DNA from: Scyliorhinus canicula
Lineage: Eukaryota
Assembly: GCF_902713615.1 (NCBI RefSeq)
Contig: NC_052154.1
Location: 159,566,754 to 159,630,753 of the forward strand
Reading direction: 5' to 3'
Length of the DNA: 64,000 nt
Under the pieces are notes generated by a model. The model saw only the letters and a program-made list of their open reading frames with translations. It did not search any database and was not told where the DNA came from. The position numbers and the translations under genes are program-made. Every line of letters begins with the position of its first letter. Position 1 is the first letter of the stretch. Shown here piece after piece: positions 20,619 to 50,866 of this stretch.

Positions 20619-20718
20619 NNNNNNNNNNNNNNNNNNNNNNNNNNNNNNNNNNNNNNNNNNNNNNNNNNNNNNNNNNNNNNNNNNNNNNNNNNNNNNNNNN
20701 NNNNNNNNNNNNNNNNNN
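20619..20718. other. Assembly gap (100 N)
   Basis: Run of exactly 100 N, typical of a gap of unknown size. Confidence 0.99.
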
Positions 20719-24440: not shown

Positions 24441-25245
24441 CAATAGATCACTTCTCAATCTTCAAAACTCCTAATTACATAACCCCAATTTACTGAGCCT
24501 CATCACAGGAAAACCCTCGCATCCCAGGGAAAGATCCAATGAATCTTTGCCCACTGCCTCCAATGTAAATATATATTTCCATATTACTTTGTGACAGAGA
24601 TTGATGACCTATATGGTGGGTGGATTGCCTAGTCAATTCATAAGGTCTGTCTTAGTTTTATCTGTCATTTAGTGTTATTTATAGTTTGGAATTGACCAAA
24701 ATTGTCCTGTTAGCAACATAAAAAATAGAAAATAAGAGCAGGATTAGATCATTCAGTCCATCAAACCTGCTCTGGCATTGAATTCTCTATCTCAAAGCCA
24801 TACTCGCACTTTCTCCCAATATCCCTTGATGCCTTTAGAGTCTAGAAATCTATCTACTTCCTTCTTAAATATGTTCAGTGACTTGGCCTCCACAATCTTC
24901 TGTGATAGAGAATTCTACAAATTCACCACCCAAAGAATGAAGAAGTTTCTCCTGATCTCAATTCTGTGTTAATTCATGTCTAACTGATCTGGATTCTGGG
25001 CTCGAGAGTGTGGAAGGTCACCTAAGTTAGTATTTAGTGTTTGCTTTGCTTCACTCTGCACAGCAATGTTCTTCCTGTTTTAATTGTGGAATCCTGTGGC
25101 TTCAATCTTTTGACAAATAGCTCGGAATTTGGATTTTTTTCTTGAAAACAAGGTACTGGTCTCTACCAAGATCGTAATAATAACTTAATAATATGAGGGT
25201 ACTATTATGTCAAATCCTGTTTTAAAATATTAAATTATTTTAAAG

Positions 25246-25584
25246 GATCTTTAGAATTGGAGATATTCCCCTCACCACTGGAAATTTCAGCAAATGAAGA
25301 TGCACTTCTAATGTGCAAATATGATCAACCAGAGTCTGATCTCACAGACATAGCTGTTCGATGGGCATTTAGTTCGCAAACAAACCAGAGAGATATGTAT
25401 ATATTTGACGGAGGAAATCATGACCCAAAAAGAACTGGAGCAAAGATGTTTGATGATGATATACGGAAAGGAAATGCTTCACTTTACCTTCCAAATGTAC
25501 AGTTTAATGAAGCAGGAACATACACCTGCATTGTTTTTGTTACTCCCCATAAAGAAGAGATTAGTTCAATTATGCAAGTATCAG
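25246..25584 (+). CDS. Ig V-set exon of a B7/NCR3LG1(B7-H6)/tapasin-like gene
   Basis: AAAG|GA TCT TTA...TCA G|GTAAGA, 339 bp, phase 1-1; LLMCKY..AVRW..GNASLYLPNVQFNEAGTYTCIVFVTP with both Cys and Trp; family assignment from motif recognition only. Confidence 0.9.
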
Positions 25585-26509: not shown

Positions 26510-26824
26510 TCCAACCAAAAGTCAGCGTATCCGCACTCAAAGTTACAACTGCAAATGGTACAGGGCACTTCTTGGCATGCCATGTGAAGGAATTTTATCC
26601 TGAAAAGGTCAATATTAGTTGGTTGATATTAACAGATGGAAAACTGGAATATGCTTCAAAAAATCAATTCACCGAGGATCTAGTTAGGAACAGTGATGGA
26701 ACATTCAGCGTTTCCAGTAAAATAAGAATTGAACCAACACTGGATGATCGCACTAAGTATAGATGTGTGGTGAAACATAAAACCTTTCTTGGCAATTTTA
26801 CACTGGACGCTGACCGAGTGGAAG
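26510..26824 (+). CDS. Ig C1-set exon of the same gene
   Basis: ATACAG|TC CAA CCA...GAA G|GTAAGA, 315 bp, phase 1-1; LACHVKEFYPEKVNISW..NSDGTFSVSSKI..YRCVVKH. Confidence 0.9.
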
Positions 26825-33226: not shown

Positions 33227-33383
33227 GTCATCTATACCAATTTCCCGCCCACATTTGACAATAAATAGATCTGATTAATAGAACGGGACAAATGCAGCTT
33301 CTAATGAATATATTCAAAAGATGCAATTATTTATTGGCAAGTTTTCAAAGATTTGTGTATGTTTTTTACTTTAACAGAATAAG

Positions 33384-33476
33384 TACCACAAGGAGCAATT
33401 ATTGGAGCCATTTGTGGCTTTGTCTTGGTTTGTGCAGCATGTTTCGGACTCTATTTCTGGATCAAAAAACGTAAAG
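33384..33476 (+). CDS. Transmembrane exon (acceptor ambiguous: 33378 or 33384)
   Basis: (V)PQGAIIGAICGFVLVCAACFGLYFWIKKRK G|GTAC: hydrophobic stretch plus basic stop-transfer, phase 1 donor; the upstream CAG acceptor would put TAA in frame. Confidence 0.7.
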
Positions 33477-34955: not shown

Positions 34956-36498
34956 GGGCAGAATTCTCCGTTGGCTGAGGGCGAAATCGCAAAACGTGAT
35001 TGGGTGAAGAATTGGTTGCGATGCACAAATCACGGCGGAGCCGATTTGGCGCCAAATGACAATTCTCCGTCACCTCGACAGTGACATTAGTGCGGCCCAG
35101 CACGCACGTACAGTAAACACCGTTTGCTTGTCATTAGCGAGCCTGACGTGGTATTCTCTGAGGCCTCTGTGATGCTCCGCCTCCGATGAGCTGGGTATCC
35201 GATGGTGCTGTTCACTTGTGCTTTTAAAAATCATTAAACCGGTGTTCTGTCTGCTGAGGGGGAGAGAGGGGGAACAGAAAGCATCCAATATCACCATAGA
35301 TTGCTGGTCTGGGAAATTCTGCCAGGCCCGGAGGGAGTAGCGGGGGGTAGTCAGGAGGTGGGCTCTGGGGTCGGGGTGGACTGGCACGGAACACCATTGC
35401 CGGAGCTGGCAAGGCAACTATGCAGCTGCACACGCCACTAACAGCCCACTGTGAAGATAGGCCCCCTGGACCCGCCCCTACCAGGTGCCCTCTGGCCCCA
35501 GCCGACTATATGGGCATGCTCCAGCACAACGAGTGCCATCTTGTTGGCTGGGATGTGTGTGTGGGGAGTGCAGTGTGTATATGCGGCTGCAGCTTTTCAG
35601 CCTCCTGAGTGTCAATCACGGACCTGGCGAATCCTGCACCACTTTCCATTGGAATCGATTGTGCTTCACATGGCGCCAGTGCTAGCCCCTCAACAGTAAC
35701 GGAATCAGTCCAGGTTCGGCGCCAGTTTTGCTGTCATGAAAATCCATTAATTCCTTCCCGCCGTCAACACTTAGGGCGCGATTCTCCTCCCCCCCCCCCC
35801 CCCCCCCCCCCCACGCCGGGTGGGAGAATAGCGGGAGGGCCTCCCGACATTTTTCACACCCTCCCGCTATTCTCCCCCCCCTCCACGCCTGACCCATGCC
35901 ACGAATGGCCGCTCGCTGTTTTTTATGGTGAGCGGCGATTCTCCGAGGCTGATGGGCCGAGTGGCCGGGCCTTCGCGCCTGTTTCAACATGGCAGCAAAC
36001 ACACCTGCTTGCTGCCGTCATGAAATGGGCGCCAGATGCCCGTTTGGGGCATCTGGGGGCCCAAATGGCACGGCCGTACCACGGCCATGCCAAGGGGGGC
36101 ATAGGCCCGCGATCGGTGCCCACTGATCGCGGGCCGTGCGTCCATAACGGACGCACTCTTTTCCCTCCGCCGCCCGCAAGATCAAGACGTGGCGGCTGAG
36201 GGAAAGACGGCAACTGCGCATGCGCGGGTTGGCGTTATCCAACCTGCGCATGCGCGGCCGATGTTATCGGCCGCGTCAGCCGGCGTGATGCTTGACGTGC
36301 GGCCTTGACGACCGTCGCCAAGGCCGCGCTGCCGTGATGCACGGGGCCGCGCTCCTAGCCCCGCCCAGGTGAGAGAATCGGTCCCAGAAGTGGGCGTGAA
36401 GGCTGCCGTGGGTCACGGCCTGTCCTACAGCAGCCTTCACGATTCTCCGCATTTGCGGAGAATCTCGCCCTTAGTCTCAGGAATAGAGAATCCAGCCC
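34956..36498. mobile_element. Harbinger-type MITE with a nested MITE at 35774-36470
   Basis: Outer TIR GGGCAGAATTCTCC...GAGAATCCAGCCC; inner TIR GGGCGCGATTCTCC...GGAGAATCTCGCCC with TTA TSD. Confidence 0.8.
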
Positions 36499-37461
36499 CA
36501 GAGTTTTATAAAGGTTCAGCATAACCTGCTTGCTTTTGTACTCCATACCTCTTCTTATCTTGTCTGGAATCCTATTTGCTTTGCTAACTGCTCTCTCAAT
36601 ATGTCCTGCCTCCTTCAAAGATCTACGCATCAGAACTTTTGTCGCAGCACACTCTTTGGAACTGTGCCATTAAAATAGATTGCCTCTCCTTGTCCTATCT
36701 GTTTAAAATACATCACTTCACACAAGACCTGACATGGCAGATGGGGGTCAGCCAGCCAAAAGTCCATTGACTTCAGCAGCACCGTTAAATCCCTCTGGTG
36801 GGCAGCACCGGTAAAACACGCTATATCCTTGTGCAGTTGATTGGTAACATTTGCAGTGTTTGCCACATTCCAAGTTTGGCATCATTGGCAAACTTAGAAA
36901 TTTTTGTATTCCAATATCTAAGCAATTTATACGTAATGGTCCTACCACTGACCCTTGGAAACACCACTGTTTGTCATCCTTCAGTCTGAAAAACAGCCAT
37001 TTACCATAACTTGCATGTTTTGAACCTAAAGCTACATTTTTCTCCAAGCTGACACTGACTCTCTTATTAGATGGGTAGCCGTTGATAGTGATGGTGTTTC
37101 CCGTCCCTCCACCAAAAATGTTGGTGCGGAGTTCTTCCCTGCTTTGTAAGGTAGCTTCTCGGCTATTTAATGCTCTGAGGGGCAAGGTCTGTCTCCGAGA
37201 GCTGCTGGCCCTCTGATTGGCTGGCAGTTCTCTGAACCCAACAGCACCACTGCATCTAGTCCCAGTGCAGAAAAGCCAGGAACCAGATATAAGGTACGCC
37301 AAGTGGGCTGGTCACTTACAGGTCTCAATTGGGGTGATAGTGAATGGGCCACGTTGGCCCGCAGCCCCCCCCCCCCCCCCCCTCCCCAACCCTCCATTCC
37401 AAAAGTCCTACTTGACATTGTTCCTTGTTCTTCTCCGTAACATGTGATACAATAATCACTC

Positions 37462-37688
37462 TTTTTAAAAATAAATTTAGAGTACCCAATTCATTTCTTC
37501 CAATTAAGGGGCAATTTAGCGCGGCCAGTCCACCTAACCTGAACATCTTTGGGTTGTGGGGGCGAAACCCACGCAAACACGAGGAGAATATGCAAACTCC
37601 ACACGGACAGTGACTCAGAGCCGGGATCGAACCTGGGACCTCGTGGCCGTGAGATTGCAGTGCTACCACTGTGCCACCGTGCTGCCCT
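37462..37688 (-). mobile_element. tRNA-derived SINE (duplicated at 41083-41309)
   Basis: Minus-strand GGGCAGCACGGTGGCACAGTGG head. Confidence 0.85.
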
Positions 37689-38183
37689 AACAATGATCAC
37701 TCTTACCCAAGTGGTCCCCATAGATATATGGGGCGGGATTCTCCGTTTCTGAGACCCAGTCCTGGCACCAACAGTGACTACGTGAACTTGTACGACAAAA
37801 GAAATCGGTGCTGCCGGTGAGGGGCTAGCACAGGTGCCACATGGAACACCATCGATTCCCATGAAAAATGGTGCAGGAGTCGCCGGGTCCGTGATCGACA
37901 CTCGCAGGACAGACAAGGTACTGCCGCACATAAACATATACTCCCCTCACACACTTATCAAAGCCAACAAGATGGGACAGGTTGTGCTGGAGCGCCCACA
38001 CAGCTGCTGGGTTGGCTGGAGCCAGAGGGCACCCAGGAGGGTGCCCCAGGCAGGACAGCTATACGACTCAGGGTACTAGGTTTAAAGCGGGCTGTTAGCG
38101 CCATGCACAGCTGCACGCCCCGAGTTGTCACAATCAGGAGTTTGTGTGCCTGTTAATATATTTTGATTGTATTGTTGTTTCAG

Positions 38184-38261
38184 TGCCAAGCAAACAAGAG
38201 GAAAGTAAAGATGATAGTGGCAAAGCTCTTCTTGCAGACCTACATTCTCGCCTTGCAAGAG
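38184..38261 (+). CDS. 78-bp phase 1-1 post-TM exon, copy A1
   Basis: GTTTCAG|TG CCA AGC...GCA AGA G|GTAAAT; (V)PSKQEESKDDSGKALLADLHSRLAR. Confidence 0.65.
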
Positions 38262-41200
38262 GTAAATACTAATGCTAAGTGCATAGTTTCTGTTCTTATC
38301 AGTTTAATTTGAACTCAGTCATATTTTTTTAATTTATTGGGTTTTTTGCACATGGTATATTTACAGGTGTACACAAAGAGAAACAAAAAGCGGGTAATGA
38401 AAACAAAAACACGATATAGATAGCAAAACCACATCAATAATAATAAAAAACAAAAAACCAAGGGGTGGGAAAGTAAAAGCTGGGGAAGTGTTTATACATA
38501 GAAGCACTGGAGAGACAATTACATTGTAGATGTCTTCGGGGCTTCCCCCCACCTTCTTTTCTTCTGTTATTTTACCGAAGAGAGTACATACAACACTGGC
38601 AATACAAATTAAAACTGGGTGGGGGATGTTGCTTGCTTCTCTTCGTTGGTTTTCACTGTAGTTGTTGTGTGTTTTCTTCCACTTCAGCTGTCCATCATTT
38701 CTTCCTCCTGTACTTTTTTATTCTCTATTGTCCTGCTGTGTTCGTTATGTTTGTTGTCCCTTCCCCTGCTCTCCATCCAGCTTATGTTCCCTCGTTTTTC
38801 CATACCTCTGGCTCCTCTCTGTTGTTCTTTGCCTCCCGTCCTTCCTACTTCCGTCCCGTCCCTCCCTACCCCCCTTTCCCCTCCCCCCTCATCCCTCTCC
38901 CTCCCTGCAGCTCCCCTTTTTTCTTATGTGTTTGGTAGCCTCTTCTTTCACTGGTCTCTCCCCCCCCCCCCCCAAGAGGTGGGCTCTGGGGTCGGGGTGG
39001 ACTGGCACGGAACACCATTGCCGGAGCTGGCAAGGCAACTATGCAGCTGCACACGCCACTAACAGCCCACTGTGAAGATAGGCCCCCTGGACCCGCCCCT
39101 ACCAGGTGCCCTCTGGCCCCAGCCGACTATATGGGCATGCTCCAGCACAACGAGTGCCATCTTGTTGGCTGGGATGTGTGTGTGGGGAGTGCAGTGTGTA
39201 TATGCGGCTGCAGCTTTTCAGCCTCCTGAGTGTCAATCACGGACCTGGCGAATCCTGCACCACTTTCCATTGGAATCGATTGTGCTTCACATGGCGCCAG
39301 TGCTAGCCCCTCAACAGTAACGGAATCAGTCCAGGTTCGGCGCCAGTTGTTGCTGTCATGAAAATCCATTAATTCCTTCCCGCCGTCAACACTTAGGGCG
39401 CGATTCTCCTCCCCCCCCCCCCCCCCCCCCCCCCCCACGCCGGGTGGGAGAATAGCGGGAGGGCCTCCCGACATTTTTCACACCCTCCCGCTATTCTCCC
39501 CCCCCTCCACGCCTGACCCATGCCACGAATGGCCGCTCGCTGTTTTTATGGTGAGCGGCGATTCTCCGAGGCTGATGGGCCGAGTGGCCGGGCCTTCGCG
39601 CCTGTTTCAACATGGCAGCAAACACACCTGCTTGCTGCCGTCATGAAATGGGCGCCAGATGCCCGTTTGGGGCATCTGGGGGCCCAAATGGCACGGCCGT
39701 ACCACGGCCATGCCAAGGGGGGCATAGGCCCGCGATCGGTGCCCACTGATCGCGGGCCGTGCGTCCATAACGGACGCACTCTTTTCCCTCCGCCGCCCGC
39801 AAGATCAAGACGTGGCGGCTGAGGGAAAGACGGCAACTGCGCATGCGCGGGTTGACGTTATCCAACCTGCGCATGCGCGGCCGATGTTATCGGCCGCGTC
39901 AGCCGGCGTGATGCTTGACGTGCGGCCTTGACGACCGTCGCCAAGGCCGCGCTGCCGTGATGCACGGGGCCGCGCTCCTAGCCCCGCCCAGGTGAGAGAA
40001 TCGGTCCCAGAAGTGGGCGTGAAGGCTGCCGTGGGTCACGGCCTGTCCTACAGCAGCCTTCACGATTCTCCGCATTTGCGGAGAATCTCGCCCTTAGTCT
40101 CAGGAATAGAGAATCCAGCCCCAGAGTTTTATAAAGGTTCAGCATAACCTGCTTGCTTTTGTACTCCATACCTCTTCTTATCTTGTCTGGAATCCTATTT
40201 GCTTTGCTAACTGCTCTCTCAATATGTCCTGCCTCCTTCAAAGATCTACGCATCAGAACTTTTGTCGCAGCACACTCTTTGGAACTGTGCCATTAAAATA
40301 GATTGCCTCTCCTTGTCCTATCTGTTTAAAATACATCACTTCACACAAGACCTGACATGGCAGATGGGGGTCAGCCAGCCAAAAGTCCATTGACTTCAGC
40401 AGCACCGTTAAATCCCTCTGGTGGGCAGCACCGGTAAAACACGCTATATCCTTGTGCAGTTGATTGGTAACATTTGCAGTGTTTGCCACATTCCAAGTTT
40501 GGCATCATTGGCAAACTTAGAAATTTTTGTATTCCAATATCTAAGCAATTTATACGTAATGGTCCTACCACTGACCCTTGGAAACACCACTGTTTGTCAT
40601 CCTTCAGTCTGAAAAACAGCCATTTACCATAACTTGCATGTTTTGAACCTAAAGCTACATTTTTCTCCAAGCTGACACTGACTCTCTTATTAGATGGGTA
40701 GCCGTTGATAGTGATGGTGTTTCCCGTCCCTCCACCAAAAATGTTGGTGCGGAGTTCTTCCCTGCTTTGTAAGGTAGCTTCTCGGCTATTTAATGCTCTG
40801 AGGGGCAAGGTCTGTCTCCGAGAGCTGCTGGTCCTCTGATTGGCTGGCAGTTCTCTGAACCCAACAGCACCACTGCATCTAGTCCCAGTGCAGAAAAGCC
40901 AGGAACCAGATATAAGGTACGCCAAGTGGGCTGGTCACTTACAGGTCTCAATTGGGGTGATAGTGAATGGGCCACGTTGGCCCGCAGCCCACCCACCCCC
41001 CCCTCCCCAACCCTCCATTCCAAAAGTCCTACTTGACATTGTTCCTTGTTCTTCTCCGTAACATGTGATACAATAATCACTCTTTTTAAAAATAAATTTA
41101 GAGTACCCAATTCATTTCTTCCAATTAAGGGGCAATTTAGCGCGGCCAGTCCACCTAACCTGAACATCTTTGGGTTGTGGGGGCGAAACCCACGCAAACA

Positions 41201-41804
41201 CGAGGAGAATATGCAAACTCCACACGGACAGTGACTCAGAGCCGGGATCGAACCTGGGACCTCGTGGCCGTGAGATTGCAGTGCTACCACTGTGCCACCG
41301 TGCTGCCCTAACAATGATCACTCTTACCCAAGTGGTCCCCATAGATATATGGGGCGGGATTCTCCGTTTCTGAGACCCAGTCCTGGCACCAACAGTGACT
41401 ACGTGAACTTGTACGACAAAAGAAATCGGTGCTGCCGGTGAGGGGCTAGCACAGGTGCCACATGGAACACCATCGATTCCCATGAAAAATGGTGCAGGAG
41501 TCGCCGGGTCCGTGATCGACACTCGCAGGACAGACAAGGTACTGCCGCACATAAACATATACTCCCCTCACACACTTATCAAAGCCAACAAGATGGGACA
41601 GGTTGTGCTGGAGCGCCCACACAGCTGCTGGGTTGGCTGGAGCCAGAGGGCACCCAGGAGGGTGCCCCAGGCAGGACAGCTATACGACTCAGGGTATTAG
41701 GTTTAAAGCGGGCTGTTAGCGGCATGCACAGCTGCACGCCCCGAGTTGTCACAATCAGGAGTTTGTGTGCCTGTTAATATATTTTGATTGTATTGTTGTT
41801 TCAG

Positions 41805-41882
41805 TGCCAAGCAAACAAGAGGAAAGTAAAGATGATAGCGGCAAAGCTCTTCTTGCAGACCTACATTCTCGCCTTGCAAGAG
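41805..41882 (+). CDS. 78-bp phase 1-1 post-TM exon, copy A2
   Basis: Same as 38184 apart from one synonymous change (AGT/AGC). Confidence 0.6.
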
Positions 41883-42429
41883 GTAAATACTAATGCTAAG
41901 TGCATAGTTTCTGTTCCTATCAGTTTAATTTGAACTCAGTCATATTTTTTTAATTTATTGGGTTTTTTGCACATGGTATATTTACAGGTGTACACAAAGA
42001 GAAACAAAAAGCGGGTAATGAAAACAAAAACACGATATAGATAGCAAAACCACATCAATAATAATAAAAAACAAAAAACCAAGGGGTGGGAAAGTAAAAG
42101 CTGGGGAAGTGTTTATACATAGAAGCACTGGAGAGACAATTACATTGTAGATGTCTTCGGGGCTTCCCCCCACCTTCTTTTCTTCTGTTTTTTTACCGAA
42201 GAGAGTACATACAACACCGGCAATACAAATTAAAACTGGGTGGGGGATGTTGCTTGCTTCTCTTCGTTGGTTTTCACTGTAGTTGTTGTGTGTTTGCTTC
42301 CACTTCAGCTGTCCGTCATTTCTTCCTCCTGTACTTTTTTATTCTCTATTGTCCTGCTGTGTTCGTTATGTTTGTTGTCCCTTCCCCTGCTCTCCATCCA
42401 GCTTATGTTCCCTCGTTTTTCCATACCTC

Positions 42430-42580
42430 TGGCTCCTCTCTGTTGTTCTTTGCCTCCCGTCCTTCCTACTTCTGTCCCGTCCCTCCCTACCCCCCTTTCC
42501 CCTCCCCCCTCATCCATCTCCCTCCCTGCAGCTCCCCTTTTTTCTTATGTGTTTGGTACCCTCTTCTTGCACTGGTCTCT

Positions 42581-42612
<32 letters not shown>

Positions 42613-43460
42613 ACCCGCCTGGGTCTTTCCTCCCTTCCGTCTCTTATGTTTTGGATACTTTCCCCTAGGTCTTGGCTAGTTGATTATTTATTTGTTCGTT
42701 GGCCACAAACAGGTCCCAGAACAGTTGGGTGAATGGCTCCCATGTTCTGAAGAAGCCATTTTCTGACCCCCGGGTGGGAATTTGATTTTCTCCATTTGGA
42801 GAAATTCTGAGAGGTCGGACAGCCAGTCTGCTGCTTTAGGTGGTGCTGCTGACAGCCAGCTGAGCAGTAGGTGATCAGGGAGGCAAAGGCAAGGGCGTCT
42901 GCCCTTCTCCCCATGAAGAGGTCTGGCTGCCTGATACCCCGAAGATCACCACTTTCGGGCATGGCTGCACCCTCGTCCCCGCCACTTTGAACATTGCCTC
43001 GAAGAAGGCTGTCCAATACCCAGCAAGACCAGAACAGGTGGGCGTGGCTTGCCAGCCTCCTTGGCACCGTTCACATCTGTCCTCCATCTCTGGGAAGAAG
43101 CTACTAATTCAGGTTTTTGTAAAGTGGGCTCTATGTATCACCTTTAGATGCGTTAGGTTGAGTCTTGCGCATGTGGAGGTGGAGTTGACCCTATGTAGTG
43201 CTTCACTGGAGAGTCCCCACCCTATTTTGAGCCCCCGGTCTTCCTCCCATTTCTTCCTTGTTGCGTCCAGTACAGTGCCTGCCCTCTCTACCAGTCGTTT
43301 GTACATGTTGCTATAGTTTCCTCTGCCTAGAATGTTTGCATCCAGTAACTCCTCTGGTAGTGTCTGTCGTGGTGGGCATGGGTACACCCTTGTCTCCTTC
43401 CATGGGAAGTTGTTATGCTACAGATACCTGAGTCTGTTGTCCTTAGCTAGCTGAAATTTC
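42430..43460 (-). mobile_element. L1 3' fragment
   Basis: LHRVNSTSTCARLNLTHLKVIHRAH; 5' portion of this fragment is also copied at ~38810-38970. Confidence 0.75.
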
Positions 43461-44018
43461 TCCGTCAGTTTATCCAGTGTTGCTCAGTTATATATTTAAC
43501 AACAATTAGGAGACAGATCATTTCAGGATGAATTTCAATGGGAGAGGGTCATTCCAAACTTCTCATTATCCATATTCAAAGTTTCAAAAGTTGGTTCAAA
43601 ATCACATAAGAAATTCTCGGGCAGTGACTGAAATGCAGATGTTCTGGAGATTATTATAAAAATATACACATCAAGGTCCCCAAAACAACAGATAACAGGT
43701 GAATAGGGCACTCAATATAACTCATACCTCTGCCACACTGTGTTAACTCAGCATTATTACAATCACGCAGCTCTACCTTGAGATGTTTTCCTGTATGGTT
43801 ATACTCTGCAACCGCAAAACAGAAATGTAAATATTTTTATTCAGAACTCGCATCTTACTGAGGAGGATTCAGGCCAATTCCACATCCAACAACATGTTCT
43901 GAAAGCACTGTTCATATTATTGTCAATTCAGTTCCTAATTTATGTCTAAATAAGAATGCAAAGGAGAGAGCTCAAAGATAAAAGAGTTTATATCACAGTA
44001 ATTACTTTTGTTTTGTAG

Positions 44019-44190
44019 TTCTGCCCACAATTCGAGATATTAAGAAACTGGATGGAATCAGACACAGAGAACCAGCCAATCTGAGTTGGGATGTTACTGT
44101 GTTCAGTCCAGAGTGGGTGAACATTGTTACATCGGTGAAGAGGAAAGGGGAGCAGGAAGCAAAACAGTTACGTCACTGGGAAATTACAGC
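44019..44190 (+). pseudogene. Truncated paralog of the Cys-less C1-like exon
   Basis: TTTGTAG|TT CTG CCC ACA...; LPTIRDIKKLDGIRHREPANLSWDVTVFSPEWVNIVTSVKRKGEQEAKQLRHWEITA; homology to 46314 ends at ~44190 with no matching donor. Confidence 0.7.
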
Positions 44191-44804
44191 ATCAGCCATC
44201 CACGTTTTTCAGGCGTCACCTCATTTTAAATTGATTCTACAGCAAAATAGTGCAATGCACACAGGAAAATATGAGTTGGATTGTGAGATAACGATGATAT
44301 ACTTCAAACTCTGAAGCCATAGACTGCCTTGATAGTCGTAAATTTGACTCTTGGGCAGAGTCCACTGATCAGGGAAGCTGCAGTACTGCTGTTTCTGTTA
44401 CAGTCTAAACAGGATTCAGTGAAAATTTAAAAATATACCTCTCTCCCAAGTCGAAACATTTCTTTTCATAAAGTTTTCATAGAATTTACAATGCTGAACG
44501 AGGCCATTTGGCCCATCGAGTCTGTACCAGCCCTTGGAAAGAGCATCCTACCTAAGCCCATACCTCCACCCTATACCCACACTGTATGTTCTCCCTGTGT
44601 TTGCGTGGGTTTCCTCCGGATGCTCCGGCTTCCTCCCACAATTCCCAAAGGAGTGCTTTTCAGATGAATTGGACATTCTGAATTCTCCCTCAGTGTACCC
44701 GATCAGGCACCAGAGTGTGGCGACTAGGGGATTTTCACAGTAACTTCATTGCAATGTTAATGTAAGCCTACTTGTGGCACTAATAAAGATTATTACTGTT
44801 ATTA

Positions 44805-45046
44805 CCTCCACCCTATCCCCGTAACCCCACCTAACCTTTTTTGGACACTAAGGGCAATTTAGAATACCCAATCCATGTAACCTGTACATCTTTGGGCTGT
44901 GGGAGGAAACCGAAGCACCCGGAGGAAACCCACGCAAACGGGGAGAACGAGCAGACTCCGCACAGACAGTGACCCAAGCTGGGAATCGAACCTGGGACCC
45001 TGCAGCTGTGAGCAACTGTGCTAACCACTAATCTACTATGCTGCCC
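44805..45046 (-). mobile_element. tRNA-derived SINE (adjacent to a + strand SINE at ~44585-44795)
   Basis: GGGCAGCATAGTAG..GGTTAGCACAG..GGTTCGATTCCC on minus. Confidence 0.8.
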
Positions 45047-46313
45047 TACAAGTTCAAGTAACTTGATGTAATGTTAGACCAAAGCTGATGCCATAGCCAT
45101 TCTGAATACTAGATTTCATAATGAAACATTGTATTTGTGCATTGGCTCGGTATTAAATTTAACTTTATGAATGAACTCGCTTTTCTTTGAACAGGATCAG
45201 TTCAGGGCGGCAATCGCCACCCAGAGAGAAAATGGCACAAAAGATCAAGTGATCTTAGGGATCATTTTTGGTGACCCATTTTTCAACACCCAGGACCCAC
45301 TGGTGGGTCGGGACCCTCACTTTGGAAAACACTGATATCGATAATCTAAGGGTGAATTTCAATGAGGGAACAACTTTCCCAATGTTTTATAATCCAGGCC
45401 TAAAGTTTCTAAAGTTGGTTAATAAAAGGATGCATAAAAGGGGCAACATTCCCGATGTACTAGAGATAGTTATTGTCTTCAGCATTTCATTGTCCCACCA
45501 ATAATGAGTAAAAAAAATTTCTGGTGGGGTTGTTTGTGGCTGAAGGATTTTTACTTTAACCACAGAGCTCGTTCATCCTTATGAATGTGTCCTATTTCGC
45601 TTCTACCTGAGAAGTCACGGGATGTCCTTAGTTTACTTCAAGGTTTAGAAGTTGGCACCTGGAACTATGCAGCACTTTCCCTCCATTGAGCAATGAAGTA
45701 TCATTTGGATTCCATGAAAAAGAAGAATGTTACTAAATTAAGCAAGTGGATAACGGAAGGTCCTTTAGAAAGATAGGTCTTGGTGCCGGGTTTCAACAAA
45801 ATTGTCACCATAGTGAATACATTCCACTCACCAGTACATTATATGCTACTGAATACACAGTTAATTCAGAATTTCTTATGATTTTGCAACAACTATCTGA
45901 ACATCCTGGTGTCCTCAATTCAATAAATAATGAAACAGAACACTTTGTGTGTATTGGCACAGTTAAGTCAATCGTTGGTCTGCAGTTTGTGAATCCTACA
46001 GGTTCAAATTAGCATTATATATGAAACTGCTAATACATGAGTAACATCAGGTGACCCATTCAAAGAGGTTCTAACAATGGCTCATCAGCCTATGAATAAA
46101 CTATTTTGGAACGAAGGAACAACATCAATTTGAGAACATGCCACAGGCACTTCTGCGAAATTGAAATAGCAACAAATAAGAAAAAAGCAATCATAACCTA
46201 ATTCTTCAATGAATGTTGCTGCTAATTCAGTTTGTAATTGGTTTAAACAAGAATGCTTAGGGGAGAATTGGAACAAATGGGTTTCTGTCATATTAATACA
46301 TTTTGTTTTGTAG

Positions 46314-46736
46314 TTCCACCCTCAATCGGTGATATTGAGAAACCGGATGAAATCAGACACTGTGAGACAGTCAATCTGAGTTGGGATGTTGCTGTGTTCA
46401 GTCCAGAGGTGATGACCATTGTTACATCGGTGAAGAGGAAAGGGGAGCAGGAAGCAAAACAGTTATTTTCCTGGGAAATTACAGCAGAGCAAGTGTCAGG
46501 ACCAAAGCGTGTAACTACTCCGCTAAAACATAAACCGAATTTGTGCAAGAAAGATGATTCCTTCACAGCTGAGGTTCCAGATTTACAACGCATGTCTGAT
46601 GGATGTTTCCTTATCCCCTGCTCCATTTCACTGAGGCCTGATATATCCAAGGACGATGGTGCTGAGTTAATCATTGAAGTTACACAGGATTCGGAGGAAA
46701 CTCAGAGTAAAAGCACAGTACTAGAAATCACAGCAG
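46314..46736 (+). CDS. Extended C1-like Ig exon lacking the canonical Cys pair
   Basis: TTTGTAG|TT CCA CCC...GCA G|GTAATT, 423 bp, phase 1-1, open; PPSIG..VNLSWDVAVFSPE..DLQRMSDGCFLIPCSISLRPDISKDDGAELIIEVTQ. Confidence 0.75.
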
Positions 46737-47610
46737 GTAATTTCTACATTTTACACATCAGACAAACTCCTGTGCAATGGTGGTGAAAACCTTTAGCTGC
46801 AAGTTGGGACACCAATATAAAGATAGCTTGAAATGTTATTTCCCTTTAATATTCCAATACGATTTGGCAAATCTGATATAGTTTGCAATTTTGGAGCCAC
46901 AGTACAATAATTTGGTCAGAAGTAGTTTCCTGCTTTATATGAGAATTGTAGGAATTCCTGAGCTAAATGCCCATTACCAGATTTATATCAGTATACTGTG
47001 GGTAGTGTGCTGGATGTCAATGTCGATTGAAATATGTGCAGTAAATATTGGTGCTCTCTGAAACAGTTTAAGAAATCATTGGCTGCACATAGGAACTATC
47101 ATCCTCCAGCAATATAACTGGTAGACATTAATTTCTACAATTGTCCTCAGCTTCTTCTGCTGCTTTACTGTTAGCTTCTAGCTTGTATTTTACATTTCAT
47201 CCTGCTGACCTTTAAGTGACCCATGATAACTGCATTTTTATCAATGTCATGCTTGGCAACTATCCTGGTACCACACATGTGGCTGAGAAAAAAGTCAGAT
47301 TCTGGATCCTGGATTCACTGCTAGTACTCTTCCCAAACATAGGAAATGGATAACGTGGGGGAAACTGCTTGGCTGCGCACATGTATGTAATGACTAAGAA
47401 TGAATCAGGAATGGATCTGTAGTGGATTTTTCATATCATTCCTGGATGAAGTTTGATGACAACTGTAATGTCCCACAATGGGCGTGGAGGTCAGATCTTG
47501 TGAAATGTTGACATTTCCCCCCATTTTCTTGAGTTCTGGCTTCTCCGTCCATGGTAATTGACCCTACATTGGATAGACATTCTTGAATTGTGACAGAAAA
47601 CACTCAGGAT

Positions 47611-47821
47611 GGGGCAGCATGGTGGCTGTGGTTAGCACTGCTGCCCCACGGCGCTGAGGTTCCAGGTTCGATCCCGGCTCTGGGTCACTGTCCGTGTGGA
47701 GTTGCACATTCTCCCTGTGTTTGCGTGGGTTTCGTGGGATGCACAGGGTTGCGGATTGGCCATACCAAATTGCCCCTTAATTGGAAAAAATGAATTAGGT
47801 ACTCAAAAATTATTTAAAAAA
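47611..47821 (+). mobile_element. tRNA-derived SINE with 16-bp TSD
   Basis: TSD AGAAAACACTCAGGAT at 47595-47610 and 47822-47837. Confidence 0.92.
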
Positions 47822-48132
47822 AGAAAACACTCAGGATAATATGTATTCAAGCTGTCATTGTAGTCAGTGAGTGAAACCTTGTTCCTTATCTTCTGCTGTT
47901 CTTCAGCTGAGATTATTGTTAAAAACTGTGGAAATGTAATGTTTTCTTGATGAGAAATCAGAATTCATGTTTGGACAGATTTTATTCTGCCAGTTGTTTT
48001 GAGTGATGTTTACGGGCATCATTATAGTGAATATTGCTGCAGCCCTTAAAACCTTTCATTATACATCTGTCTAAAAAACTACCCAGATTGTAATCACCTA
48101 TCCTGTTTCTGCTGTTAGTATTTCTTCACCCA

Positions 48133-49270: not shown

Positions 49271-49809
49271 AAAAAGATCAGCAACGATCTTATTGAATGA
49301 TAGAGCGAGATCGAGGGGGCAGATCACCTAACCCTGCTCCCAGTTCCTATGTTCTTTTGTTCCTATATTTCCCAAAGATTAACGGGCGTGATTCTCCCAA
49401 AGGGAGACAAAGGGCGCGATTCTCCGCTCTCACGCCGGTTCGGAGAATAGCACGCCACGCGATTTTCACGGCGACGCCGGTCCGACGCCCTCCCGCTATT
49501 CTCCGAACCCCGCACAAACTACACGTTGGCATTCCCGGCAAAGGTCTCGACAGACCCCCCCAACACGACCAGAAGCCCGACTTTTTGGCCCCACGCTATT
49601 CTCTGGCCCAGATGGGCCGAAGTCCCGACGTCATCACCCAATGTTTTCACGCCAGCCAACACACCGGCTTTTCAAGTTTGTCAACCAGTCATGCTGGCTG
49701 ACGAGAGCATCGAGGAGGTGAGCGCACCGCTCAGCGCAAAGCTCAGCGCACTGCTGTAGTCTGGCCACAACGGGGAAGGCATCCCCGAGAACGGGAAGGA
49801 GGTCCAGAG

Positions 49810-50595
49810 CGGGGGGGGAGGGGGACGGGGGGGACCGGGGGGAGGGGGGGGACGGAGGGGGGGATGGAGGGGGGGAGTGTGGGAGACGGAGGGGGGAGTG
49901 GGGGAGACTGAGTGGGGGAGACTGAGGGGGGAGTGGGAGACGGAGGGGTGGAGTGTGGGAGACGGAGGGGGGAGTGTGTGAGACTGAGGGGGGGAGTATG
50001 GGAGACTGAGGGGGGAGTGGGGGAGACTGAGGGGGGGAGTGGGAGACGGAGGAGGGGAGTGTGAGAGACGGAGGAGGGGAGTGTGGGAGACTGAGGGGGG
50101 AGTGGGAGACTGAGGGGGGAGTGTGAGAGACGGAGGAGGGGAGTGTGGGAGACTGAGGGGGGTGTGGGAGACTGAGGGGGGGAGTGTGGGAGACGGAGGG
50201 GGGGAGTGGGGGAGACTGAGGGGGGTGTGGGGGAGACAGAGGAGGGGAGTGGGAGACGGAGGGGGGGAGTGGGGGAGACTGAGGGGGGAGTGGGAGACTG
50301 AGGGGGGTGTGGGGGAGACAGAGGAGGGGAGTGGGAGACGGAGGGGGGGAGTGGGGGAGACTGAGGGGGGAGTGGGGGAGACTGAGGGGGGAGTGTGGGA
50401 GACGGAGGGGAGGTGTGGGAGACGGAGGGGGGGAGTGTGGGAGACTGAGGGGGGAGTGGGGGAGACTGAGGGGGGAGTGTGGGACTGAGGGGGGGAGGGG
50501 AGTGACTGAGGGGGGAGTGTGGGAGACTGAGGGGGGAGACTGAGGGGGGAGTGGGAGACTGAGGGGGGAGTGGGAGTGGGGGAGTAGGGAGAGAG
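49810..50595. repeat. G-rich minisatellite (GGGAGAC[T/G]GAGGGGGGAGT[GT] variants)
   Basis: Dozens of imperfect ~19-23-bp units, highly G/A-biased on +. Confidence 0.95.
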
Positions 50596-50866
50596 TGAGC
50601 GAGTGACTCGTCCAACCCCGGTTACAAAATGTCTGCCACCATGCCATGGCGTGCCGGTCACGAGGACACGGCCGCTGGTTTCCCTGTGCCTTACGGCCAC
50701 AGGCCACTGATGCACCGGTGAGGAGGACGTAGTTAACTGCCCGTTGGATGCAGAAAGTGATCAGGGGTTAGGCTGCCCGCCTGGCAGCAGCGCGACCAGG
50801 CCACCGGGACACACAGGTATCCCATGGCTGGCGGCTGCCGAGGTGTCGACTAACCTCCGTCTAACA

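What the first reader, a model, noticed from the sequence alone, without database searches (positions are those of the whole stretch)
46314..46736. C1-like exon that has lost both disulfide cysteines and the C-strand Trp but remains open
Seen: the B strand reads VNLSWDV (C>W), the C strand reads IVTS (no W) and the F strand reads ELIIEVTQ (C..H > I..Q). The PP start, the DG.F..S..L.P E strand and the DDG.E motif are kept, with a long C-D insertion. The LSWDV change is shared with the paralog at 44019, so it predates their duplication. Established: disulfides do not normally form in the cytosol. Inference: loss of the Cys pair fits selection for an intracellular Ig fold and supports the post-TM topology.
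Basis: partly seen in the sequence, partly recalled or inferred. Interest (0 to 1): 0.7.

Follow-up and report, generated by a model that had tools for sequence, protein, structure and literature searches.

The report
Disulfide-free antibody-type domain after membrane anchor
This catshark exon encodes a real, transcribed antibody-type (Ig) domain that folds without the usual sulfur bridge; it is the first module after the membrane anchor in B7-H6-like immune ligands from chimaeras to alligators, and predicted splice forms in four other species drop the anchor, so it may work inside the cell, outside it, or both.

Summary
Window 46314-46736 (+) is a phase 1-1 exon of 141 codons. In RNA-type contigs from three studies, coverage covers just this exon, with none in the flanks. 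The canonical B-strand Cys is Trp, the C-strand Trp is gone, and the F-strand Cys..His is Ile..Gln.

Pfam does not recognise the exon alone, but a profile of 32 homologues matches only C1-set domains. AlphaFold gives a confident Ig sandwich (pLDDT 92.5). Purifying selection is moderate (omega about 0.6), similar to the gene's V and C1 exons.

The exon belongs to an unnamed domain type, here "D1". D1 is the first domain after the TM helix in B7-H6/NCR3LG1-like proteins, from chimaera to alligator. Cartilaginous fishes also have a subfamily, including this gene, whose tail holds only D1 copies.

- The F-strand Cys was lost before cartilaginous and bony fishes split.
- Neighbouring post-TM domains D2 and D3 keep the Cys-Trp-Cys triad.
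- The exon still has four Cys, two at positions conserved in the family.
- RefSeq isoforms in four species skip exactly the TM exon, so the domain may also be secreted.

The scan had already met the post-TM Ig tail on other DNA of this genome (s1-240097, s1-286315).

The parts
46314..46736 (+). D1-type Ig exon: 423 nt, phase 1-1, 141 codons. A C1-set-derived domain with Trp23 in place of the B-strand Cys, no canonical C-strand Trp, and Ile in place of the F-strand Cys. It has a long C-D insertion and the conserved motifs KRK, LF(H/S)W, C..DDSF, IPC.I.L.PDIS.DDGAE.
   Evidence: Sequence and translation. RNA-type contigs of X1, X3 and X7 begin at 46314 and end at 46736-46738, with zero depth in the flanks. 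AF2 pLDDT 92.5. hhalign to C1 gives 98-99% probability.
46300..46313 (+). Polypyrimidine tract and AG acceptor of the exon (attttgttttgtag).
   Evidence: The contig ends coincide with 46314.
46737..46742 (+). Splice donor gtaatt.
   Evidence: Contigs leave the genome sequence at 46736-46738.
44019..44195 (+). Truncated duplicate of the first ~177 nt of the exon, with about 100 nt of duplicated upstream intron and an AG acceptor. Homology ends at about 44195 and the frame runs into a stop at 44312-44314. Most likely a pseudo-exon.
   Evidence: tblastn gives 59 aa at 71% identity. DNA alignment. dN/dS against the intact exon is 1.18, bootstrap 0.51-3.4. Run X3 shows some depth over 44002-44168, which is unresolved.
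33384..33476 (+). TM exon (93 nt, phase 1-1) encoding the hydrophobic helix, written out in the report, followed by KKRK. An alternative CAG acceptor six nt upstream (exon start 33378) puts TAA in frame.
   Evidence: tblastn of Heptranchias P0008. Its words are held by RNA-type runs X2, X3 and X12, which also hold the D exon.
26510..26824 (+). Ectodomain C1-set exon (315 nt, phase 1-1) with the canonical Cys, Trp and Cys (LACHV, ISW, YRCVVKH).
25227..25583 (+). Ectodomain V-set exon. These are approximate tblastn limits; the exact splice sites were not determined.

Best explanation
The exon encodes one module of a distinct, ancient and so far unnamed kind of Ig domain, here called D1-type. It descends from the C1-set constant domain and holds its core together without the canonical disulfide.

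At the three canonical positions:
- A Trp (or another bulky hydrophobic residue) sits at the B-strand Cys position.
- An aliphatic residue sits at the F-strand Cys position.
- The canonical C-strand Trp is dispensable, while a new Trp on strand C' is nearly invariant.

A C-D insertion of about 35 residues adds strands, so the model looks like a nine-strand, V-like sandwich.

D1 is the membrane-proximal first domain after the single TM helix of B7-H6 (NCR3LG1)/B7-H3-like ligands. In cartilaginous fishes a subfamily, to which this gene belongs (V, C1, TM, then D1 copies and acidic low-complexity linkers or tail), has multiplied D1 alone.

Shown here: homology, fold, exon-limited RNA coverage (transcription and splicing), purifying selection, and position after the TM in gene order and in orthologous models.

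Inferred: in the TM-containing isoform the D1 modules lie in the cytosol, directly under the membrane. There they act as disulfide-independent structural or scaffold modules of the ligand's tail, carrying a conserved basic KRK turn and conserved acidic surface motifs as likely contact sites. In TM-skipped isoforms the same modules are exported, which a disulfide-free fold tolerates equally well.
For: Homologues:
- HMMER against 1.8 billion representatives gives 37 hits. The best proteins carry 2-7 tandem copies.
- Pfam on those proteins shows V-set plus C1-set before the TM and nothing named after it.

C1-set ancestry and fold:
- The profile of alignment A1 hits only C1-set chains in the PDB (IgA, MHC II beta2, C-lambda/kappa, IgM, beta2-microglobulin), with E from 1e-4.
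- hhalign of A1 against the ectodomain C1 gives 98.2% probability, E=5e-14. Against post-TM D2/D3 it gives 99.3%, E=7e-21.
- The AF2 model has pLDDT 92.5 and pTM 0.86.
- Listed Foldseek matches are almost all Ig domains (two arrestin-like and two ZP-C rows); all listed VIA-align matches are, Z up to 11.6, 112-115 residues aligned at 2.6 A.

Place in the family:
- In the tree the D1-only modules form one clade (98/92). They join the long-form D1 domains (99/96), and that group is sister to D2 (98/82).
- The triad table shows the F-strand Cys absent from D1 in all 12 long forms and Trp at the B position in all D1-only copies.

Position after the TM:
- A single TM helix lies just upstream of the match in every full-length homologue.
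- An independently recorded elephant-shark sequence (UniRef V9K7L7) contains both the TM and the whole post-TM array.

Transcription: RNA-type contigs from three studies cover 46314-46736 only and run on into unlike sequence on both sides.

Selection:
- NG86 omega for catshark versus sevengill shark is 0.56 (bootstrap 0.33-0.98).
- Codon ML across 8 exons gives 0.58, LRT 23.0, p=1.6e-6.
- For the same three species, V is 0.45, C1 is 0.52 and D is 0.62.

Glycosylation sequons: they are enriched in the ectodomains (61 observed, 38.6 expected) but not after the TM (79 observed, 74.4 expected). No sequon column is conserved in D1.

Gene family: the ectodomain of the horn-shark ortholog is closest to CD276 and NCR3LG1 structures, E about 1e-26. 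NCBI names the alligator and Bombina long forms NCR3LG1.
Against: - No experiment or read shows on which side of the membrane the domain sits.
- The TM-to-D splice junction was not seen in S. canicula. The NCBI model for this locus (XP_038661993.1) starts inside the exon.
- TM-skipping isoforms are predicted in four species.
- D2 and D3 of the long forms keep the Cys pair and the Trp from chimaera to frog. That pattern is more easily explained by an oxidising compartment.
- C1-set domains are, to my knowledge, otherwise always extracellular or luminal.
- Two Cys positions (C77, C102) are conserved in D1 and could in principle pair. I had no model coordinates to check their distance.
- Selection is only moderate. 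12 of the 14 variants seen in the RNA contigs are nonsynonymous.
- The homodimer prediction gave no verdict.
Confidence: 0.6

Rival explanations
1. The D1 modules work mainly outside the cell. The relevant product would be a secreted, TM-skipped isoform: V, C1, then D1 copies in the cartilaginous-fish subfamily, or V, C1 and D1 to D7 in the long forms. On this reading the TM-containing form is a minor or regulatory variant, and the loss of the canonical disulfide in D1 is simply a tolerated core re-packing of an extracellular Ig domain.
For: - RefSeq isoforms delete exactly the TM exon in Heterodontus francisci (P0040, 31 aa), Hemitrygon akajei (P0060, 38 aa), Bombina bombina NCR3LG1 X2 (P0035, 34 aa) and Rana temporaria (P0029, 37 aa).
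- All exons in the window are phase 1-1, so C1-to-D splicing stays in frame.
- D2 is Cys-Trp-Cys in all 12 long forms, and D3 in 10 of them.
- Conserved Cys remain at positions 77 and 102.
- Run X1 holds the D exon but none of the six sampled words of the TM exon. This is weak evidence.
Against: - In each of these genes the longest isoform (X1) contains the TM, as do most of the family's other models retrieved.
- An elephant-shark sequence recorded independently of the genome model contains the TM.
- After the TM there is no enrichment or conservation of N-glycosylation sequons, unlike the ectodomain.
- Four of the seven post-TM domain positions have a broken canonical Cys pair, conserved from chimaera to tetrapods, which is unusual for an extracellular C1 array.
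- C77 is less conserved than C102, and either occurs without the other in some homologues, so they are not an obligate disulfide.
- Read support for the skipped isoforms was not checked here.
Confidence: 0.28
2. In S. canicula this copy is a decaying remnant. The exon would still be transcribed but no longer be part of a working V-C1-TM-D gene: a 12.8 kb repeat-filled intron, a truncated NCBI model and a neighbouring pseudo-exon all point that way.
For: - The NCBI model starts at an internal Met and has no V, C1 or TM.
- No full-length S. canicula model was found.
- A truncated duplicate at 44019 evolves neutrally.
- Two otherwise well conserved residues differ in this copy: Gly16 is Cys and His52 is Ser.
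- 12 of 14 transcribed variants are nonsynonymous.
Against: - The exon is open and spliced at both predicted boundaries in three studies.
- It keeps all but two of the positions conserved at 80% or more in 30 family copies.
- The V, C1 and TM exons upstream are intact and in phase.
- TM-exon words occur in the same RNA-type runs as the D exon.
- Omega on the catshark-sevengill-zebra shark trio is 0.62, p=0.012.
- The 12:2 ratio is not significantly above expectation (my estimate, p about 0.1).
Confidence: 0.08
3. It is not an Ig domain at all, and the motif resemblance is chance.
For: Pfam and phmmer-versus-PDB searches with the single exon find nothing significant.
Against: The profile search, hhalign, the AF2 model, the structure searches and the tree all agree on an Ig domain of C1-set ancestry.
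Confidence: 0.01

Closest known systems
C1-set immunoglobulin constant domains (Pfam PF07654: Ig CL/CH, MHC class II beta2, beta2-microglobulin)
   Same: Profile-level homology over the whole length. Shared features are the PP.I start, the F.P motif after the B strand, the DG.F E strand, the P-D..DDG turn and the L.I.V.(H/Q) F strand. Both are phase 1-1 single-exon domains.
   Different: There is no canonical Cys pair and no C-strand Trp, and Pfam does not detect it. An insertion of about 35 residues between C and D makes extra strands, so the model aligns best with V-type domains. It lies after a TM helix.
First post-TM domain (D1) of NCR3LG1/B7-H6-like proteins of alligator, Bombina, newt, lungfish, coelacanth, bichir, rays and chimaera
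   Same: Direct homologue at 24-32% identity, E 1e-9 to 1e-17. One clade in the tree. Same position, a few residues after the basic stop-transfer motif. Same loss of the F-strand Cys.
   Different: 7 of 12 long-form D1 domains still have the B-strand Cys, and they are followed by six more C1-type domains. In this gene's subfamily only D1 is repeated, always with Trp at the B position, and it is separated or followed by acidic low-complexity stretches.
Human B7-H6 (NCR3LG1) and B7-H3 (CD276)
   Same: The V-C1 ectodomain of the orthologous horn-shark protein is closest to these solved structures, E about 1e-26. All are type I membrane ligands.
   Different: The mammalian proteins have no Ig domains after the TM. 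From my own knowledge, the human B7-H6 tail is short, carries signalling motifs and has been described as Gag-like.
Intracellular Ig-like domains of titin, filamin and myosin-binding proteins (I-set and filamin repeats), and disulfide-less extracellular Ig domains such as CD2 domain 1 (from my own knowledge)
   Same: These are Ig sandwiches that fold without a disulfide. This is precedent that such a domain can work in the cytosol or outside the cell.
   Different: They are different Ig subtypes. This domain's profile matches C1-set, not I-set. None of them is tethered just under the membrane behind a B7-type ectodomain.

Membership tests
Ig-like beta-sandwich fold | Two-sheet Greek-key sandwich predicted with confidence and matching solved Ig domains | tested here: met
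   AF2 pLDDT 92.5, pTM 0.86. Listed Foldseek matches almost all Ig domains; all listed VIA-align matches are Ig domains, Z up to 11.6.
C1-set (PF07654) | Scores above the Pfam gathering threshold | tested here: not met
   There is no C1-set or other Ig hit for the exon even at E<=10. Post-TM D1 copies in homologues are also unnamed.
C1-set (PF07654) | Detectable homology to bona fide C1-set domains | tested here: met
   The profile finds only C1-set chains in the PDB. hhalign gives 98.2% and 99.3% probability.
C1-set (PF07654) | Canonical B-strand and F-strand Cys pair | tested here: not met
   Trp23 and Ile at the two positions.
C1-set (PF07654) | Conserved C-strand Trp packing on the disulfide | tested here: not met
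   Thr at that column in the catshark exon. Across D1 it is T, I, L or F.
C1-set (PF07654) | Seven-strand topology without C'/C'' strands | tested here: inconclusive
   The model has extra strands at 48-55, 68-72 and 83-92, and it aligns best with V-type domains. No coordinates were available to trace the sheets.
B7-H6 (NCR3LG1)-like gene family | V-set plus C1-set ectodomain most similar to B7-H6/B7-H3, followed by a single TM | tested here: met
   The V, C1 and TM exons lie in the window on the same strand and in phase. The ortholog's ectodomain matches CD276 and NCR3LG1 at E about 1e-26.
B7-H6 (NCR3LG1)-like gene family | Orthology to mammalian NCR3LG1, and binding of NKp30 | not testable with these tools
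   NCBI names only the alligator and Bombina long forms NCR3LG1. This subfamily is unnamed, and binding needs an experiment.
Intracellular Ig domains (I-set, titin/filamin type) | Profile similarity to I-set or filamin repeats | tested here: not met
   There is no I-set hit for the exon. All profile hits are C1-set.
Cytoplasmic domain of a type I membrane protein | Demonstrated location on the cytosolic side | not testable with these tools
   Only gene order, the KKRK flank and the sequon statistics speak for it. TM-skipping isoforms speak for a second location.

The most novel reading that the evidence does not exclude
D1-type modules would be the first C1-set-derived Ig domains that function in the cytosol. 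They would form a disulfide-free, membrane-apposed scaffold for reverse signalling or anchoring in an NK-cell-ligand family. Inclusion or skipping of the phase 1-1 TM exon would act as a conserved switch that sends the same Ig array either inside or outside the cell.
Probability: 0.3. Interest if true: 0.85.

Novelty: new variant of a known kind. Interest (0 to 1): 0.6.

Why it matters
C1-set domains are the hallmark of the adaptive immune system's extracellular machinery (antibodies, T-cell receptors, MHC). Their disulfide and Trp are treated as near-universal.

Here a C1 derivative has done without both across lineages from chimaeras to alligators, that is, since before cartilaginous and bony vertebrates split. 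Pfam does not see it. It sits directly behind the membrane anchor of B7-H6-like ligands.

It gives a defined, small (140 aa), confidently modelled object for testing three questions:
- Can an antibody-type constant domain fold and work in the cytosol?
- What did the ancestral B7-H6 tail do before mammals replaced it?
- Does TM-exon skipping produce a soluble decoy or ligand?

A naturally disulfide-independent constant-type Ig scaffold is also of practical interest for intracellular binders.

For annotation, the catshark locus is split. The V, C1 and TM exons are not joined to the NCBI model that starts inside this exon.

Tried and rejected
Single-sequence searches with the exon:
- Pfam gave only a chance DUF7462 hit at E=0.15.
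- phmmer against the PDB gave only a chance hit at E=0.41.
- The search for homologous proteins found nothing, which means nothing because of its length filter.

DNA retrieval:
- No DNA could be fetched for the S. canicula, Heterodontus or Mustelus genes, because the file or gene was too large.
- No record exists for three isoforms.
- dN/dS therefore rests on Heptranchias, Stegostoma and Callorhinchus.

Other blanks:
- No S. canicula model joining TM and D was found.
- A regex search for a Heterodontus- or Stegostoma-type acidic linker exon between the TM and D exons found nothing.
- Read laying showed that the contigs continue into other sequence on both sides of the exon, but it did not print those letters.
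- Raw RNA run X20 had no reads on the exon, which says little.
- The homodimer prediction for D1 (two copies) gave no verdict, score 0.01, controls not run. It is no evidence either way.

Literature:
- Flajnik et al. 2012 (PMC3709836) and Ohta & Flajnik 2015 (PMC4594805) are not held.
- Full-text searches for cytoplasmic Ig domains and for NCR3LG1 in elasmobranchs gave nothing relevant.

Ideas considered and dropped:
- An obligate C77-C102 disulfide. The two positions are unequally conserved and each occurs without the other.
- Diversifying selection from the 12:2 variant ratio. It is not significant.

The assembly gap at 20619-20718 was left alone.

Full report
**What is at the coordinates**

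Window 46314-46736 on the + strand is bounded by ttttgttttgtag| and |gtaatt. It is 423 nt long, enters and leaves in phase 1, and is open throughout. Its 140 whole codons (window:46316-46735) carry these motifs:
- B strand: VNLSWDV.
- C strand: MTIVTSVK.
- C-C' turn: KRKGEQEAK.
- C' strand: LFSW.
- Before the D strand: NLCKKDDSF.
- E strand: DGCFLIPCSISLRP.
- Then DISKDDGAE.
- F strand: ELIIEVTQ.

**Other exons of the gene in the window**

Upstream on the same strand lie three exons:
- A V-set exon at about 25227-25583.
- A classical C1-set exon at 26510-26824.
- A TM exon at 33384-33476, which ends KKRK in phase 1.

An alternative CAG acceptor six nt upstream of the TM exon puts TAA in frame.

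At 44019-44195 there is a copy of the exon's first ~177 nt, together with about 100 nt of upstream intron. Homology then stops and the frame runs into a stop codon. Against the intact exon its dN/dS is 1.18. It is most likely a pseudo-exon.

**Is the exon used?**

I laid contigs of four runs on 43000-48000.
- In three RNA-type runs from three studies, depth is confined to 46314-46736/8 and is zero in the neighbouring bins.
- Single contigs span the whole exon and continue for 15-46 letters into sequence unlike the local DNA at both ends (records 7, 10 and 23).

That is the signature of a spliced exon at exactly the predicted borders. The tool did not print the adjoining letters, so I do not know which exon is joined upstream.

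Words of the TM exon occur in three of the same runs (X2, X3, X12) but not in X1.

The contigs also carry 14 single-base variants in the exon, 12 of them nonsynonymous and none a stop. One variant haplotype spans the whole exon, so this is an allele or a very young paralog.

**Whose gene is it?**

The exon alone finds nothing in Pfam or in the PDB by sequence. HMMER against 1.8 billion representative proteins finds 37 relatives.

P0002 is NCBI's S. canicula model XP_038661993.1. It begins at Met34 of this very exon and continues with a second copy of the domain and a long low-complexity tail. The gene range is 64 kb, so the next exons lie beyond the window.

The orthologous models have the layout V, C1, TM, then tandem copies of this domain separated by acidic linkers:
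- Heterodontus francisci: 7 copies.
- Stegostoma tigrinum: 3 copies.
- Also Heptranchias perlo, Mustelus asterias, Mobula, Rhinoraja, a Scyliorhinus torazame paralog, and Callorhinchus milii LOC121850342.

More distant hits (24-32% identity) are long proteins of chimaera, sharks, rays, bichir, coelacanth, lungfish, newt, frogs and alligator. NCBI names those of alligator and Bombina NCR3LG1 (B7-H6).

In all of these the match is the first domain after the single TM helix, beginning a few residues after a basic stop-transfer motif, for example FKK-VSPK or FKK-VPPK. The ectodomain of the horn-shark ortholog is closest to the solved CD276 and NCR3LG1 structures.

**Is it an Ig/C1 domain?**

I built a 32-sequence alignment, A1.
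- As a profile it hits only C1-set chains in the PDB. The alignments put the B-strand Trp on the Cys of MHC II beta2 and the F-strand L.I.V.H on Y.C.V.H.
- hhalign gives 98.2% probability (E=5e-14) against the family's own ectodomain C1.
- hhalign gives 99.3% (E=7e-21) against the canonical post-TM domains D2/D3. D2 shares the long C-D insertion.
- AlphaFold2 with A1 gives pLDDT 92.5 and pTM 0.86, an all-beta sandwich.
- The listed Foldseek matches are almost all Ig domains, apart from two arrestin-like (VDUP-1) and two ZP-C rows, and every listed VIA-align match is an Ig domain. The best Z is 11.6, over 112-115 residues at 2.6 A, to V-type domains. This is because the insertion supplies extra strands.

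So the domain is C1-set by descent and V-like in strand count.

In a maximum-likelihood tree the D1-only modules form one clade (98/92). They join the long-form first post-TM domains (99/96), and this group is sister to D2 (98/82).

**How old are the changes, and are they linked to position?**

An HMM alignment of all domains gives the residues at three columns: B-strand Cys, C-strand Trp and F-strand Cys.

| Domain | Pattern at B-Cys / C-Trp / F-Cys |
|---|---|
| Ectodomain C1 | Always C-W-C |
| D1 of 12 long forms | No F-strand Cys in any; B-strand Cys kept in 7; Trp kept in 2 |
| D2 | C-W-C throughout |
| D3 | C-W-C in 10 of 12 (Erpetoichthys and alligator: third hit differs) |
| D4, D5 | Lack the F-strand Cys |
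| D6 | Lacks the B-strand Cys |
| All D1-only copies (chimaera to catshark) | W, then T/I/L/F, then I/V/L |

The D4-D6 pattern is the same from chimaera to tetrapods.

So the F-strand loss predates the split of cartilaginous and bony vertebrates. The Trp is common to all cartilaginous-fish D1-only genes, not just to the two copies in this window. Being after the TM does not by itself remove the Cys pair.

The exon is not Cys-free. C77 and C102 sit at conserved positions. C102 is more strongly conserved, and each occurs without the other in some homologues, so they are not an obligate pair.

The most conserved features of 30 D1-only copies are KRK, LFHW, PL, D.SF.AE.P, G.F...C.I...PD.S.DD.A and the final V. 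The catshark exon keeps all but two of these positions: Gly16 is Cys and His52 is Ser.

**Selection**

- NG86 omega between the catshark exon and its Heptranchias counterpart is 0.56 (bootstrap 0.33-0.98), against 0.48 for V and 0.44 for C1 of the same pair.
- The Callorhinchus repeats give 0.25-0.44.
- Codon ML (GY+F3X4) over eight exons from four species gives omega 0.58. Omega=1 is rejected: LRT 23.0, p=1.6e-6.
- For the catshark, sevengill and zebra shark trio, D is 0.62 (p=0.012), V is 0.45 and C1 is 0.52.

The domain evolves fast, like the rest of the gene, but not neutrally. No ortholog exon has a stop.

**Which side of the membrane?**

For the cytosol:
- Gene order, and the longest isoform (X1) of each gene whose isoforms were compared.
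- The positive flank after the TM helix.
- An elephant-shark sequence that differs from the genome model at 8 residues and contains both the TM and the tail.
- N-glycosylation sequons: 1.6-fold enriched in the ectodomains, at chance level after the TM, and never conserved in D1.
- Four of seven post-TM domain positions have a broken Cys pair.

For the outside:
- RefSeq isoforms that delete exactly the TM exon in Heterodontus (the ortholog of this gene), Hemitrygon, Bombina NCR3LG1 and Rana.
- The same skip is in frame here.
- D2 and D3 conserve C-W-C.
- C1-set domains are not known in the cytosol (my own knowledge).

I did not check the read support for those isoforms.

My reading is that both forms are made and that D1 is a disulfide-independent module which tolerates either compartment. 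I put about 0.6 on the membrane form with a cytosolic D1 array being a functional product, and about 0.3 on the secreted form being the one that matters.

**What it does**

This is inference only. D1 is a rigid Ig module placed directly under, or after skipping directly behind, the V-C1 head. In this subfamily it is repeated 2-7 times with acidic Ser-rich linkers.

The conserved basic KRK turn and the acidic DDSF and DISKDDGAE surfaces are candidate contact sites. The KRK turn of a membrane-proximal copy could face acidic inner-leaflet lipids. A homodimer test gave no verdict.

**Known or new?**

The scan had already met the post-TM Ig tail of catshark B7-H6-like genes on other DNA of this genome (s1-240097, s1-286315).

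This finding adds four things:
- The definition of the D1 type.
- Its age.
- The D1-only subfamily.
- The TM-skipping isoforms as a concrete rival for topology.

I found no paper in the searchable library describing post-TM Ig domains of B7-H6 homologues. The two most relevant papers are not held, so prior description cannot be excluded.

I class it as a new variant of a known kind.

Noticed in passing
window 35600-42800: There are two nearly identical tandem units of about 3.6 kb inside the TM-to-D intron. The same ORFs recur at 36355-36630 and 39978-40253, and at 36748-37302 and 40371-40925. This looks like a recent segmental duplication of repeat-rich DNA.
   Followed up: no
window 44336-45170 and 47509-47842: These are very high-copy SINE-like repeats flanking the exon. 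Summed contig depth in RNA-type runs is 1e4 to 3e5, with many joints to other copies.
   Followed up: no
window 49634-50715 (- strand): Open frames of 290-357 aa are made of Pro/Ser-rich repeats of the PPSVSHTP and SLPHSP type, in GC-rich DNA (0.58-0.60). This is probably a tandem repeat rather than a gene.
   Followed up: no
window 46346-46694: RNA-type contigs carry 14 single-base variants in the 423-nt exon, 12 of them nonsynonymous. One haplotype (S52Y, M93T, L99R, R107T, E127K plus two silent changes) spans the whole exon in run X1. It is an allele or a very young paralog, and the excess over expectation is not significant.
   Followed up: partly
window 44002-44168: Run X3 shows depth 12.5 over the truncated exon copy. 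Either this pseudo-exon or a paralog at least 95% identical to it is transcribed. I could not resolve which.
   Followed up: no
window 33378-33384: The TM exon has two acceptors six nt apart. Together with possible TM-exon skipping, this gives three potential products from one gene.
   Followed up: partly
proteins P0040, P0060, P0035, P0029 (Heterodontus, Hemitrygon, Bombina, Rana): In four species a RefSeq isoform deletes exactly the TM exon (31-38 aa) of a B7-H6-like gene with post-TM Ig domains. This would turn the whole protein into a secreted multi-Ig chain.
   Followed up: partly
long-form relatives (P0017, P0023, P0032, P0034 and others): The post-TM domains show a position-specific pattern, conserved from chimaera to tetrapods. 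D2 and D3 keep Cys-Trp-Cys. D1, D4 and D5 lack the F-strand Cys. D6 lacks the B-strand Cys.
   Followed up: partly
NCBI model XP_038661993.1 (P0002) versus window 25227-46736: There is an annotation gap. The catshark model, named 'DDB_G0287625-like', starts at an internal Met of this exon. The intact V, C1 and TM exons 13-21 kb upstream are not joined to it.
   Followed up: partly
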